Positions 58,868-61,940 of a stretch of 64,000 nucleotides of DNA are shown piece after piece; position 1 is the stretch's first letter, and each line of letters opens with the position of its first letter. The DNA is taken from IMG/VR virus record IMGVR_UViG_3300015261_000002, positions 160,748 to 224,747 of that record; one strand, given 5' to 3'. The translations under genes were made by a program, and so were the position numbers. The notes beneath the pieces were generated by a model. The model did no database searches, was not told where the DNA came from, and was given only the letters and a program-made list of their open reading frames with translations.

Positions 58868-59866
58868 TTACATCACGAAGCCTTTCGAATCTGCACCCTG
58901 CGAGATGTTCTTCGGCGCGACGTAGGTGGATGAAGTTTGGTTTTTACGATTCTCCATCGCCTCGATATGCGCTTCGAGTTCTTTCAGGGCTTCACCGTGG
59001 TCCAGGACCATGTGCAGCTCGGTAGCGTTGCTTGGCAGCTTGGTGCCAGCGGCGAACACACCGGTGGAACGGATCACAGTGCCGGAGAAACGGCCGACGA
59101 TTTCGTCGCTGCTCTGGAACAGGGACGATACAGCAACCGGAGTTTTGCCTTTGAACTCGGCCACGCCTTTTTCGTCGTAGAAACGAATGCGGGACATGGA
59201 CGGCGGAACACCGTAGTGCTTCGAGAAGTTCAGCAGGTTCTTCAGGTCGCTGTGGTCTTGCTCGCCGTTGGCGTTGGTCAGGAACAGGGAAGCGACGTCG
59301 AGCTTGTCGATGATCGCACGGTTCGCATCACCGCGGTTGATGTCCGGGGTGTTGTCGAATTCCATGTACGGAACGACGCGGTTCAGGGAGTCGGCGTTGG
59401 TCAGCGACGCGTACGAGCGATAGCTGTTGACGACGTTGATCTCTTCGACCTGCGAGGTCTTGTCGTTGATGAAGCACAGCACGACCAGTTGGTCTTGTTC
59501 CCAGAGCATGCGCGCCAGAACGAAGCCCAGCATGGAACCAGTACCACCGCCGGTGGAGCAGACGATGATGTTGAACGGACGCGGTTTGTGCTTGGCCAGC
59601 ACGCTCTTCAGGAACATTTCTGCCTGAGGATAGTTGGCCGCCCGGACCTTACCCGAACCCTGAGCTTTCTTTTCAGGATCGTCCGGCAGGGTCATTTGCT
59701 CGACCGGGAACAAATCGTTGGAGCTGTTGCGGTCGGAGGAGTCCATGCCGATCATGAAGGCATGCTTGTTGTTGTCGGTGTGGGTGCCGTTCTTCAGGGC
59801 CACGCCGATGTTGATACCGGTACCACCGCAGAGGAAATACGCCAGATCAGAAGTGTTTGCATTCAT
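58868..59866 (-). CDS. phuZ: PhuZ tubulin/FtsZ-family spindle protein
   Basis: G-box CGGTGINIG, tubulin signature TGGGTGS, GSGK, T7-loop N..D motif, 332 aa. Confidence 0.92.
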   Translation of the reverse strand: MNANTSDLAYFLCGGTGINIGVALKNGTHTDNNKHAFMIGMDSSDRNSSNDLFPVEQMTLPDDPEKKAQGSGKVRAANYPQAEMFLKSVLAKHKPRPFNIIVCSTGGGTGSMLGFVLARMLWEQDQLVVLCFINDKTSQVEEINVVNSYRSYASLTNADSLNRVVPYMEFDNTPDINRGDANRAIIDKLDVASLFLTNANGEQDHSDLKNLLNFSKHYGVPPSMSRIRFYDEKGVAEFKGKTPVAVSSLFQSSDEIVGRFSGTVIRSTGVFAAGTKLPSNATELHMVLDHGEALKELEAHIEAMENRKNQTSSTYVAPKNISQGADSKGFVM

Positions 59867-59931
59867 GTGAAATGTTCTCTTTGAGTTACCAGTTGGAAGA
59901 ATTCGTTAGACCATTGACGGTCAACACACAG

Positions 59932-59959
59932 ATGATGTAGGTCTGAAATCTTTTTACCC
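59932..59959 (-). promoter_or_regulatory. Candidate early promoter of phuZ
   Basis: GGGTAAAAAGATTTCAGACCTACATCAT. Confidence 0.6.
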
Positions 59960-60001
59960 GACTTCAGCCCATTACCTACATCCCCAAGAATTGTTCCCCA
60001 A

Positions 60002-60185
60002 GTGAAAAAGAACCCCTGTTGCAAATGAGTACTCGGCACACCCAAGCTAACTCGACAACAGGGGCTGTCCTCAGAAAAGACCTAACACTTGTGAGAAGTA
60101 CCCGCAAACCGAAGGACAGTAGGACCCACCTCCAATCCACGTCACCAAGAAAACCCAGCTACGAGAAAAACTGGATGACGTGTGC
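60002..60185 (-). ncRNA. Candidate structured small RNA A (~185 nt)
   Basis: Three consecutive helical domains (60138-60182, 60065-60119, 60013-60064) ending in TTCTTTTT; no credible ORF. Confidence 0.45.
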
Positions 60186-60214
60186 AAGTATAAAATATAT
60201 TTATCCGGTGAGAA

Positions 60215-60443
60215 AAAACAAAACGCGAAATAATCCCACCACACCCAGACCCCCCGAAGGAGAGCTGAGTGTGGTGGAAGTATCTTTGGCAGGTGGAGCT
60301 TTTCCCAGCGATGGAATGCCAGGACAGCCGATCGTTAATGGGGGACAATCGACTGTTGCGGGTAGTGGACTCCAAACTATTCCCGCGGATACGCCAGGGC
60401 TAACTATCTTCAAAGCAGGAGCAAACTCACGAGTTCACATAGC
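60215..60443 (-). ncRNA. Candidate structured small RNA B or structured 3-prime UTR (~225 nt)
   Basis: Stems 60358-60386 and 60324-60356, then a long cUUCGg terminator stem 60236-60277 with a T-rich tail. Confidence 0.4.
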
Positions 60444-60451
60444 ATAGAAAA

Positions 60452-61039
60452 TTACGACCCCTTGGTTTCTTCGAATGGCGCATCATCGACGACTGCGCCC
60501 AACGTGACGACCTCTGCCGCAGGACGCTTGGACGGTGTCTCAGGAACTGGTGGAACTTCGAATACCTGGAGATTACCCCCGCACTCGATGCACAGGTTGA
60601 TCGCCGCCTTGACACCTGCCCGGGCTGACTTGCCAATCGACATCACCGCTACTGCGTATTGCGCGCCGTCCCCAACGGCAACGTATCCGGTAGACGGGAT
60701 GATGTTCAGGATTGTGCGCTTGTCGGCTTTGGTCGACTCCGACGGAATAACCTGGTAAGCGACCCCATTTTCGCCAACCACGAGTGCGTCGAAGGTAGAG
60801 TCCAGAACCGTGGCGTCGGTGGAGTGGTCCATGCCGTCCCGCAGCATCTTCCGGAACTGCGGATAAACCACGGGAGTTGCAATCACTGCAAACGCTACCG
60901 CTTTGACACCACAGATCTCCCAGTACTCCCCTTCGTCTGGTGTGTAGATCTTGCGGAACTCGGTTGGGCTGATTTGACCGTCGGTATGGATCGCCGAATC
61001 GGTGACCAGAAGTTTACCGTCGAATGCTGCTACGGACAT
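60452..61039 (-). CDS. Ntn-hydrolase (HslV/proteasome-beta-like) paralog with degenerate active site
   Basis: MSVAAFDGKLLVTDS..., AVGDGAQYA, CIECGG; clearly paralogous to the upstream gene. Confidence 0.65.
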   Translation of the reverse strand: MSVAAFDGKLLVTDSAIHTDGQISPTEFRKIYTPDEGEYWEICGVKAVAFAVIATPVVYPQFRKMLRDGMDHSTDATVLDSTFDALVVGENGVAYQVIPSESTKADKRTILNIIPSTGYVAVGDGAQYAVAVMSIGKSARAGVKAAINLCIECGGNLQVFEVPPVPETPSKRPAAEVVTLGAVVDDAPFEETKGS

Positions 61040-61687: not shown

Positions 61688-61698
61688 ACTGTATACCT

Positions 61699-61940
61699 CG
61701 TGCGTGCGTACGCGTTTCTTTGCTTTTTAAAAGCTCTAAAAGCAATAAAGAATAATAAATATATAAATATATTTATAAGGTTCTTTAGCGCACGGAGCGC
61801 GTGCGCGCACACACGCGATAATGAAGGGAAATATTTTTCCTTGAAATTAGCCAATTGACAAAACAAAAAACTTACCAAAGTTTTCCGAAGGAACTGTGAA
61901 AAACAAAAATATACCCTTTACCCCCCGGCCGCGGCGGCCG
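61699..61940. other. AT-rich palindromic non-coding element flanked by GC alternating tracts
   Basis: 16-bp palindrome TATAAATATATTTATA (61762-61777) between cgtgcgtgcgtacgcg and gcgcgtgcgcgcacacacgcg; cggccg-cgg-cggccg at 61926-61940. Confidence 0.5.

What the first reader, a model, noticed from the sequence alone, without database searches (positions are those of the whole stretch)
60002..60204. Three-domain structured non-coding RNA directly upstream of the phuZ promoter
Seen on the minus strand: stem 1 CACGTCA(T)CCAG/TTGG-TGACGTG (60138-60182); a single-stranded GGATTGGAGG linker; stem 2 CTGTCCT(T)CGG/CTGAGGACAG with an inner hairpin (60065-60119); and, immediately abutting, a long interrupted stem CCCCTGTTG..GAGT..CTTGG/CCGAG..ACTC..CAACAGGGG (60013-60064) followed by TTCTTTTT. 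An AT-rich promoter-like stretch (60186-60204) precedes it. It lies between two terminators and has no credible ORF. Inference: an independent phage sRNA. Its exposed GGAGG could act as a Shine-Dalgarno or RsmA/CsrA decoy (speculative).
Basis: partly seen in the sequence, partly recalled or inferred. Interest (0 to 1): 0.7.

Follow-up and report, generated by a model that had tools for sequence, protein, structure and literature searches.

The report
Conserved structured small RNA upstream of phuZ

Summary
The flagged element (window 60192-60005, minus strand) is real and non-coding. The host is a 224.7-kb nucleus-forming jumbo phage from a rhizosphere metagenome. The element is single-copy and absent from Rfam. 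It is present in 9 close relatives and in a diverged lineage (L031/L035, PhuZ 60% aa). A simpler version with the same layout occurs in Pseudomonas phage EL and an EL-like contig.

It does not support stem 2 or an exposed GGAGG. The GGAGG lies in a covarying helix (P3), which with stem 1 and a probable closing helix forms a three-way junction. The Shine-Dalgarno/RsmA decoy idea is therefore not supported.

phuZ has its own canonical phage promoter downstream of the terminator. FishSpeaker and phiKZ have no such spacer. Best reading: an independent structured small RNA, most likely a protein- or ligand-binding RNA. No transcript data exist, so its promoter and 5' end are inferred.

This is a new RNA family of a known kind (jumbo-phage sRNAs).

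The parts
60188..60204 (-). AT-rich stretch ATAAATATATTTTATAC, a candidate promoter or 5' end of the RNA. From 60199 it is the start of a 21-nt invariant block that runs on to 60179.
   Evidence: The block is invariant in 9 relatives. TTATAC is kept in L031, EL and L032. It scores below 0 with the position weight matrix of the phage's recurrent promoter motif, and it has no second copy in the genome. Its role as a promoter is inferred, not shown.
60099..60190 (-). Three-way-junction core closed by P1. P1 pairs TACTTGC (60190-60184) with GCGGGTA (60105-60099).
   Evidence: Predicted for all 9 close relatives and independently for L031. P1 shows 3 one-sided changes, all of which keep pairing, and no double change.
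60138..60182 (-). It has a conserved U-rich internal loop and an apical mini-hairpin (TTTTTCTCGTAGCTGGGTT).
   Evidence: 9 of 11 pairs have a change on both sides. Equivalent hairpins with different stem sequences occur in L031, EL and L032.
60108..60136 (-). P3 hairpin: ATTGGAGGTGG / loop GTCCTA / CTGTCCTTCGGT.
   Evidence: 98.9% of cells are paired. Two pairs have changes on both sides and 3 have one-sided changes that keep pairing. Pair probabilities are 0.97-1.00.
60065..60098 (-). Variable linker ending in the invariant box CTGAGGACA (AGGAC at 60071-60067). Its pairing partner is unresolved.
Evidence: The linker varies in length and sequence while the box is invariant in the 9 close relatives.
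60005..60064 (-). Intrinsic-terminator-like hairpin CCCCTGTTG...CAACAGGGG followed by TTCTTTTT. A 26-nt apical extension is present only in the window, L002 and L006.
   Evidence: 100% of cells are paired and 2 pairs have changes on both sides. The apical extension is an indel among relatives.
59919..59970 (-). phuZ's own promoter-like site, core CTACATCA at 59940-59933. It is a member of the genome-wide motif TTTcaaACCTAyATTAyy..GTG.
   Evidence: Its position-weight-matrix score is 29.7, with this copy left out of the matrix. Only 20 of 449,390 genome positions score above 15. There are 17 intergenic copies, all on the minus strand.
58868..59866 (-). phuZ (phage tubulin), 332 aa.
   Evidence: Pfam Tubulin and TubZ_C_2 hits, both below the curated cut-off. 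tblastn: 45% identity to RisingSun PhuZ and 41% to EL PhuZ.
60283..60443 (-). It starts 8 nt after the stop codon of the upstream gene.
   Evidence: 89-97% identical to close relatives, against 63-69% at phuZ third codon positions. Covariance model R3 finds L031 at E = 7e-18. 10 pairs have changes on both sides and 97.3% of cells are paired.
60212..60277 (-). Terminator 1: CCACCACACTCAGCTCTCC / TTCG / GGGGGGTCTGGGTGTGGTGG, plus TTTTGTTTTTT. It ends element A or the upstream gene's transcript.
   Evidence: The stem sequence differs among relatives with pairing kept; several pairs have changes on both sides.
60452..61039 (-). Upstream gene, 195 aa. Homologue of phage EL gp015, which is annotated as 'peptidase HslV family'.
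   Evidence: BLASTP: 35% identity, E = 4e-30. The gene order with phuZ is the same in EL and FishSpeaker.

Best explanation
The element is a small-RNA gene of its own on the minus strand.

The RNA starts at or just after the conserved TTATAC (about 60190) and ends at the intrinsic terminator (about 60005), giving roughly 185 nt.

Its 5' two-thirds fold into a three-way junction:
- P1, the closing helix.
- P3, which contains the GGAGG.
A variable linker, a conserved AGGAC box and the terminator follow.

Three observations point to a folded core that a protein or small ligand recognises (a scaffold, sequestering RNA or sensor), rather than antisense seed pairing or ribosome/RsmA mimicry:
- The conserved nucleotides sit in and around helices.
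- The purine-rich GGAGG evolves as a helix strand.
- No extended complementarity to phage mRNAs is found.

Shown: non-coding status, conservation, covariation of P2, P3 and the terminator, the separate phuZ promoter, and strand specificity.
Inferred: transcription start, independence of the transcript, and the mode of action.
For: - Nucleotide conservation exceeds the neutral proxy. The three-way-junction core is 86-90% identical to close relatives, against 63-69% at phuZ third codon positions.
- Covariation on alignment A8 is strong. 97% of cells are paired, against 40-49% when partners are slid. 14 pairs have changes on both sides, against 2.8 in shuffles (0 of 500 shuffles reach it).
- Covariance model R1 finds the diverged L031/L035 lineage at E = 1.6e-14 with all helices kept. 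L031 folds into the same junction on its own.
- The minus strand folds much better than the plus strand. The helices are rich in G-U pairs, which only work on this strand.
- No ORF is conserved.
- phuZ has a canonical copy of the genome's recurrent promoter motif between the terminator and its start codon.
- The gene order (hslV-like gene, element A, terminator 1, TTATAC, hairpin, terminator 2, promoter, phuZ) is repeated in phage EL and in L032, where PhuZ is only 38-41% identical.
- FishSpeaker and phiKZ have the two genes adjacent without these elements, so phuZ expression does not need them.
- Terminator-bounded sRNAs without ORFs have been found experimentally in the related phage 201phi2-1: 11 sRNAs, 3 of them intergenic (PMC11512511).
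Against: - There are no transcript data. The only 'RNA-Seq' runs holding a relative are flagged as probably DNA, and they show no ends.
- The AT-rich stretch does not match the phage's recurrent promoter motif.
- If P1 is real, the 5' end must lie inside or upstream of TATAC, which leaves little room for a conventional promoter.
- Most double changes come from a single diverged lineage (L031/L035).
- Models R1 and R2 do not reach EL or L032, so homology there rests on layout and short motifs.
- The mode of action is not demonstrated. The absence of targets was tested only against the phage genome, because the host is unknown.
Confidence: 0.5

Rival explanations
1. The element is a cis-acting leader or attenuator of phuZ. 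Transcription from an upstream, non-early promoter either stops at the terminator or reads through into phuZ, depending on the fold of the junction domain. That would be riboswitch-like or protein-mediated attenuation, and the short RNA would be a by-product.
For: - The element sits directly upstream of phuZ on the same strand in all four lineages that have it.
- A structured domain followed by a terminator is the usual riboswitch layout.
- Eight of the 11 sRNAs of 201phi2-1 arise by premature termination in 5' UTRs.
- The invariant AGGAC box abuts the terminator and has several mutually exclusive pairing partners.
Against: - phuZ has its own canonical promoter downstream of the terminator.
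- I found no antiterminator pairing with either terminator strand by inspecting the sequences.
- There is no Rfam riboswitch match even at E = 10.
- FishSpeaker and phiKZ express phuZ without any such leader.
Confidence: 0.17
2. The element has no promoter of its own. It is the distal part of a long structured 3' UTR (element A, terminator 1, this element, terminator 2) of the hslV-like gene. It is made by read-through of terminator 1 and perhaps processed into stable fragments.
For: - Element A starts 8 nt after the stop codon.
- Element A's first helix may use the CTAT immediately downstream of the stop codon, which would put the RNA start inside the upstream transcript.
- The AT-rich stretch does not match the recurrent promoter motif.
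- P1 needs TACTTGC to be transcribed.
Against: - Terminator 1 is a long G+C-rich hairpin with a T-run, kept by covariation, so it should stop most transcription.
- The 12-nt AT-rich block just 5' of P1 is invariant while its own 5' flank varies. That fits a promoter or start element better than a spacer.
- TTATAC is kept across all four lineages.
Confidence: 0.15
3. One reading: the RNA works as a Shine-Dalgarno or RsmA/CsrA decoy through an exposed GGAGG.
For: - GGAGGUG is a perfect 7-nt complement of the 3' end of 16S rRNA (sequence read; the complementarity is from general knowledge).
- GGA motifs occur at two equivalent places in the window's clade and in L031.
Against: - The GGAGG is paired in P3 with probability 0.97-1.00.
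- It becomes GGGGG in L005 and GGGAG in L031, with the partner strand changing to keep pairing.
- EL and L032 have no such motif at that place.
- Only two GGA motifs are present, and neither lies in a hairpin loop of the supported fold.
Confidence: 0.03
4. The conservation reflects a DNA-level element, such as an operator, a replication or packaging signal, or a bidirectional terminator, and not an RNA.
For: - The region contains several inverted repeats.
- The phuZ promoter just downstream is itself embedded in a conserved inverted repeat.
Against: - The helices tolerate U-A, U-G and C-G exchanges and contain many G-U pairs. These would be A-C mismatches on the other strand or in a cruciform.
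- The two strands fold unequally.
- The layout of structured domain, hairpin and T-run is a transcript layout.
Confidence: 0.05

Closest known systems
Terminator-bounded sRNAs of nucleus-forming jumbo phages, found by ONT-cappable-seq in 201phi2-1 and phiKZ (PMC11512511, PMC10914365)
   Same: - Short units without an ORF in which a terminator follows shortly after a start.
- Intergenic or in front of a gene.
- From the same virus group (RNAP-encoding, PhuZ-encoding phages).
- Function unknown.
   Different: - No sequence or model similarity was shown.
- The one sRNA reported as conserved there lies upstream of a tail gene (phiKZ gp182 / 201phi2-1 gp277), not phuZ.
- phiKZ has no spacer between gp38 and phuZ.
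- Here there are no transcript data, but there is covariation evidence, which those studies lack.
Transcription-terminating riboswitches and leaders (aptamer with a multi-helix junction, followed by an intrinsic terminator)
   Same: A three-way junction with conserved junction and loop nucleotides, followed by a linker and an intrinsic terminator, upstream of a gene on the same strand.
   Different: - No Rfam family matches.
- No antiterminator alternative was found.
- The downstream gene has its own promoter after the terminator.
Bacillus phage phi29 pRNA (structured phage RNA built on a three-way junction that works as part of a protein machine)
   Same: A phage-encoded, non-coding RNA of about 120-190 nt whose function would reside in its fold rather than in antisense pairing. 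This comparison is from general knowledge and is an analogy only.
   Different: - No sequence or structural homology was tested or expected.
- The virus family is different.
- There is no evidence here for multimerisation or a packaging role.
RsmY/RsmZ-type protein-sequestering sRNAs of Pseudomonas
   Same: A terminator-ended sRNA with GGA-containing purine tracts.
   Different: - RsmY and RsmZ display several GGA motifs in loops.
- Here there are only two GGA motifs. Both lie in positions explained by base pairing, and they are not conserved as sequence.
- No Rfam hit.

Membership tests
Any Rfam 15 family (riboswitches, known sRNAs, ribozymes, tRNA-like elements, GOLLD/ROOL and others) | Score at or above the family's gathering threshold with its covariance model. 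| tested here: not met
   There were 0 matches at gathering score over the whole window. At E <= 10 on 59700-60600 there were only two chance-level hits to eukaryotic families, and both fell on the terminator 1 region.
tRNA / tmRNA | Cloverleaf or tmRNA recognised by ARAGORN. | tested here: not met
   No tRNA or tmRNA gene in the window.
Independent bacterial- or phage-type sRNA gene | No conserved ORF. | tested here: met
   ORFs differ in frame and extent among the 9 relatives because of 1-nt and 26-nt indels.
Independent bacterial- or phage-type sRNA gene | Intrinsic terminator at the 3' end. | tested here: met
   Hairpin 60064-60013 plus a T-run. 100% of cells are paired and 2 pairs have compensatory changes.
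Independent bacterial- or phage-type sRNA gene | Own promoter and a discrete transcript. | not testable with these tools
   - An invariant AT-rich block precedes the element, but it does not match the phage's recurrent promoter motif.
- No usable RNA run was found.
Independent bacterial- or phage-type sRNA gene | Structure conserved with covariation in relatives. | tested here: met
   P2 has 9 of 11 pairs with changes on both sides, and P3 and the terminator have 2 each.
Transcription-attenuating riboswitch or leader | Mutually exclusive terminator and antiterminator pairings that control the downstream gene. | tested here: inconclusive
   - The terminator is present.
- No antiterminator was found by inspection.
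- Alternative pairings of the AGGAC box exist.
- The downstream gene has its own promoter.
RsmA/CsrA-sequestering sRNA | Several conserved GGA motifs exposed in loops or single strands. | tested here: not met
   The GGAGG is paired in covarying P3. The motif mutates to GGGGG and GGGAG with pairing kept.

The most novel reading that the evidence does not exclude
The element, together with its neighbour element A, is a new class of structured regulatory RNA specific to EL-related nucleus-forming phages. One possibility is a ligand- or protein-sensing domain whose fold decides between termination and late read-through into phuZ. Another is an RNA component of a phage ribonucleoprotein that acts in or at the phage nucleus.
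Probability: 0.12. Interest if true: 0.8.

Novelty: new member of a known kind. Interest (0 to 1): 0.5.

Why it matters
Nucleus-forming jumbo phages are known to make small non-coding RNAs, but none has a known function and none has been supported by comparative structure analysis.

Here two adjacent RNA elements are kept across lineages whose PhuZ proteins are 38-60% identical to the window's. Compensatory mutations support the comparison with the 60% lineage. A shared layout supports the comparison with the 38-41% lineages.

One of those lineages, Pseudomonas phage EL, is cultivable. That gives a tractable system in which to ask what such RNAs do: map the ends, delete the element, and pull down its partners.

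It also shows that automatic annotation places spurious 'hypothetical proteins' on this spacer in several EL-like records.

Tried and rejected
- **Rfam.** Searches at gathering score and at E <= 10 found nothing relevant.
- **blastn against phage records.** The spacer gave no match in 50,697 records. The EL version matches only EL-like phages at >= 96.6% identity, which gives no usable variation.
- **Sequencing runs.**
  - Only DNA holders were found, plus two wastewater 'RNA-Seq' runs flagged as probably DNA.
  - These hold relatives below 90% identity and carry no transcript-end information.
- **Search for more lineages.**
  - The metagenome scan added one close relative.
  - The IMG/VR scan with a wider PhuZ alignment added L031, L035 and L032.
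  - A P1-anchored DNA pattern found nothing new.
  - Two scans of bacterial genomes found nothing, so there is no host clue.
- **Covariance models R1 and R2.**
  - They do not reach EL, L032, RisingSun or phiKZ.
  - A weak FishSpeaker hit (L023:758-865, E = 0.35) has a similar P2 loop and a P3-like hairpin.
  - It cannot be tested, because FishSpeaker has no relatives in the collection.
- **Second copy of the AT-rich 'promoter'.** None was found in the genome.
- **Sigma-70 scan.**
  - It gives TTCTCA-16-TATACT.
  - The -35 part lies in a variable patch.
  - EL and L032 have TATACC.
  - By general knowledge of phiKZ, these phages do not use host RNAP. I rejected it as weak.
- **Target search.** No complementarity longer than 12 nt was found between either RNA and the phage genome, which is chance level.
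- **Coding hypotheses.**
  - The 142-aa plus-strand ORF 60019-60447 and the minus-strand small ORFs are not conserved in frame.
- **Pseudoknot between the P3 loop (GUCCU) and the AGGAC box.**
  - It has one compensatory change in L031.
  - A local hairpin and another upstream partner fit about as well, so I left it unresolved.
- **One script failure.** The identity script timed out. Its rerun gave unreliable spacer and hslV values for some loci. I used only its phuZ codon-position values and took the RNA identities from the model alignments.

Full report
**Context.**
The window is the last 64 kb of a 224,747-bp IMG/VR virus record with direct terminal repeats. It was assembled from a rhizosphere metagenome.

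The gene at 58868-59866 (minus strand) is a PhuZ tubulin. It has weak Pfam Tubulin and TubZ_C_2 hits. It is 45% identical to Erwinia phage RisingSun PhuZ and 41% to Pseudomonas phage EL PhuZ. The host is therefore an uncultivated nucleus-forming jumbo phage.

The gene upstream (60452-61039) is a homologue of EL gp015, annotated 'peptidase HslV family' (35% identity, E = 4e-30). The 585 nt between the two genes (59867-60451) contain the finding.

**The observation.**
- The minus strand of 60002-60204 folds to -69.9 kcal/mol against -52.5 +/- 3.8 for shuffles (z = -4.62, 0 of 200 as good).
- The plus strand gives only -45.1 kcal/mol (z = -2.52).
- A terminator-like hairpin with a T-run lies on each side.
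- Rfam has no match, either at gathering scores over the whole window or at E <= 10 over 59700-60600.
- There are no tRNA genes.

**Relatives.**
PhuZ-based searches found 7 IMG/VR contigs and 1 further metagenome contig with PhuZ about 79% identical.
- The whole spacer aligns at 82-85% identity in the 7 IMG/VR contigs and at 82% in the metagenome contig.
- A wider search added L031/L035 (PhuZ 60%), L032 (38%), EL and RisingSun.
- No reading frame is maintained across the close relatives. Indels of 1 nt and 26 nt shift or break every candidate ORF, including the 142-aa plus-strand ORF.
- The junction core of the element is 86-90% identical to the close relatives, against 63-69% at phuZ third codon positions. 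The DNA is therefore under selection that is not protein-coding.

**Structure.**
- P1, a closing helix: TACTTGC (60190-60184) with GCGGGTA (60105-60099).
- P3: ATTGGAGGTGG (60136-60126) with CTGTCCTTCGGT (60119-60108).
- A variable linker, the invariant box CTGAGGACA, and the terminator follow.

A covariance model built on this fold (R1) finds exactly one copy per genome. It finds L031/L035 at E = 1.6e-14 with every helix kept. L031 alone folds into the same junction.

Pair counts on the model alignment:
- 97.0% of cells are paired, against 40-49% with slid partners.
- 14 pairs have changes on both sides, against 2.8 in shuffles (0 of 500 reach it).
- P2: 9 of 11 pairs changed on both sides.
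- P3: 2 pairs changed on both sides, 3 one-sided, 98.9% paired.
- P1: 3 one-sided changes, all at positions opposite U where a transition keeps pairing.
- Terminator: 2 pairs changed on both sides.

Two caveats apply. The alignment is fitted to the model. Most double changes come from one diverged lineage.

Stem 2 shares the strand GTCCTTC with P3, so only one of the two helices can form.
- In the window's ensemble the P3 pairs have probability 0.97-1.00 and the stem 2 pairs 0.00. Enforcing stem 2 costs 4.9 kcal/mol.
- In L031, 4 of the 9 stem 2 pairs break, whereas P3 keeps pairing through G-C to A-U and U-G to A-U exchanges.
- GGAGG becomes GGGGG in L005, still pairing with CCUUC through G-U. 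It becomes GGGAG in L031, with the partner changed to CUUCC.

This is how a helix strand evolves, not how a Shine-Dalgarno or RsmA-binding motif evolves. The decoy idea is therefore not supported.

The invariant AGGAC box (60071-60067) remains unexplained. It can pair with:
- the P3 loop GUCCU, with one compensatory change in L031;
- a local GUCUU;
- a UUCUCA just after P1;

I leave this open.

**Is it a separate gene?**
A recurrent motif (TTTcaaACCTAyATTAyy..GTG) occurs at 17 intergenic sites, all on the minus strand. [quoted passage not shown]
- A position weight matrix built from the other 16 sites scores the site at 59970-59919 at 29.7. Only 20 of 449,390 genome positions exceed 15. phuZ therefore has its own promoter downstream of the element's terminator.
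- From 60199 it belongs to a 21-nt block that is invariant in 9 genomes, while the 12 nt before the block vary.
- Its TTATAC is kept in L031, EL and L032.
- It may be a start element of another promoter class. The phiKZ late consensus is TATG overlapping the start (PMC7618050). This is inference.
- If P1 is real, the 5' end must lie at or before TAC.

**Wider conservation.**
Phage EL has the same order of parts in its 506-nt spacer:
- HslV-like gene;
- about 200 nt of structured sequence;
- a terminator with a TTTTGTTTTTT tail;
- AATATCTTATAC;
- a long hairpin whose loop (..CGCCAUGGUUC..) resembles the P2 loop here;
- a small hairpin;
- a second terminator;
- the annotated phage promoter;
- phuZ.

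L032 has the same order. Both versions fold well: z = -5.03 for EL and -3.38 for L032. They lack P3 inside P1, and models R1 and R2 do not detect them. Homology to these lineages therefore rests on layout and short motifs.

FishSpeaker and phiKZ have the HslV-like gene directly next to phuZ, with gaps of 16 nt and 50 nt. The spacer RNAs are thus a lineage-specific addition and are not needed for phuZ expression in general. FishSpeaker has a weak look-alike elsewhere in its genome (L023:758-865, E = 0.35). It could not be tested.

**Second element.**
- It is 89-97% identical in close relatives.
- Model R3 finds L031 at E = 7e-18 and L035 at E = 5e-15.
- 97.3% of cells are paired, and 10 pairs have changes on both sides. 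One 12-bp hairpin has 7 such pairs.
- It ends at terminator 1 (60277-60235 plus a T-run), whose stem also covaries.

Whether element A is a 3' UTR or a gene of its own is open. CTATG at its start is conserved in three lineages and resembles the phiKZ late start motif. The same CTAT can also pair with a downstream ATAG.

**Function.**
- No complementarity longer than 12 nt to the phage genome was found for either RNA.
- The host is unknown.
- No transcript data could be obtained.
- In 201phi2-1, 11 sRNAs of this general kind have been mapped, 3 of them intergenic and 8 from premature termination in 5' UTRs. None has a known function (PMC11512511).
- A 2026 review notes only that phiKZ expresses non-coding RNAs of unknown role (PMC13282480).

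I commit to an independent structured small RNA that works through its fold, by binding a protein or ligand. My confidence is 0.5 for independence plus fold, and much lower for the mode of action.

**Verdict.**
The feature is real and conserved. The proposed architecture is partly wrong, and the decoy mechanism is not supported.

It is a new RNA family of a known kind. Interest is moderate. It is raised by the existence of a second RNA next to it and by a cultivable phage (EL) that carries both.

Noticed in passing
window 60283-60443 (-), with terminator 60212-60277: Element A is a second structured non-coding element of about 160 nt that starts 8 nt after the stop codon of the HslV-like gene. 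It is more conserved than the flagged element (89-97% identity) and has compensatory changes in several helices. It has no Rfam match. L031/L035 carry it (E = 7e-18 and 5e-15). EL and L032 have a counterpart with the same layout.
   Followed up: partly
window 59919-59970 (-), plus 16 other sites in the genome (for example window 51750, 51808, 43042 and 38049, all minus strand): A recurrent promoter-like motif, TTTcaaACCTAyATTAyy..GTG, occurs at 17 intergenic sites, all on the minus strand. It is probably the early-promoter consensus of this phage. EL's annotated 'putative phage promoter' and RisingSun's phuZ upstream region carry the same core.
   Followed up: partly
window 59925-59985 (-): The phuZ promoter core lies in the 3' arm of a conserved inverted repeat: GATGTAGGT..CTGAA..TTCAG..ACCTACATC. 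The arms covary among relatives (GGT/ACC against GGC/GCC). It could be an operator, or a hairpin in read-through RNA.
   Followed up: no
G000 genome positions about 17428, 64311, 111071 and 148091 (minus strand, outside the window): Four promoter copies share an extended repeat of about 60 nt. It includes a downstream hairpin, GTGATTAAGACAATAAGTCTTTCAC, which suggests a common 5' leader on four transcripts.
   Followed up: no
window 61690-61820: A very AT-rich core of about 60 nt (GC about 0.36) is flanked by alternating purine-pyrimidine G+C-rich tracts (CGTGCGTGCGTACGCG and GCGCGTGCGCGCACACACGCG). It lies in a non-coding region of more than 340 nt between divergent genes. It could be an origin-like or unwinding element.
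   Followed up: no
L023:754-1420 (Shewanella phage FishSpeaker): A 667-nt unannotated spacer lies after the thymidylate synthase gene. It holds a weak look-alike of the flagged element (758-865, E = 0.35, with a similar P2 loop UUUUCGUAGGGU) and a long closing helix, GGGAGTGAGG..CCTCACTCCC, that is reminiscent of element A. There are no relatives with which to test it.
   Followed up: partly
EL-like GenBank records (for example PQ287649, PV472050, PQ287644), region homologous to L022:2498-2909: Automatic annotation places two or three 'hypothetical protein' genes on this spacer. Given the non-coding evidence, these are probably spurious.
   Followed up: no
runs X2 and X3: A run labelled with a single organism (X2, 91-kb contig) and a second rhizosphere metagenome (X3, 176-kb contig) each hold a related phage that includes the whole spacer. 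X2 might point to the host, but the names are coded.
   Followed up: no
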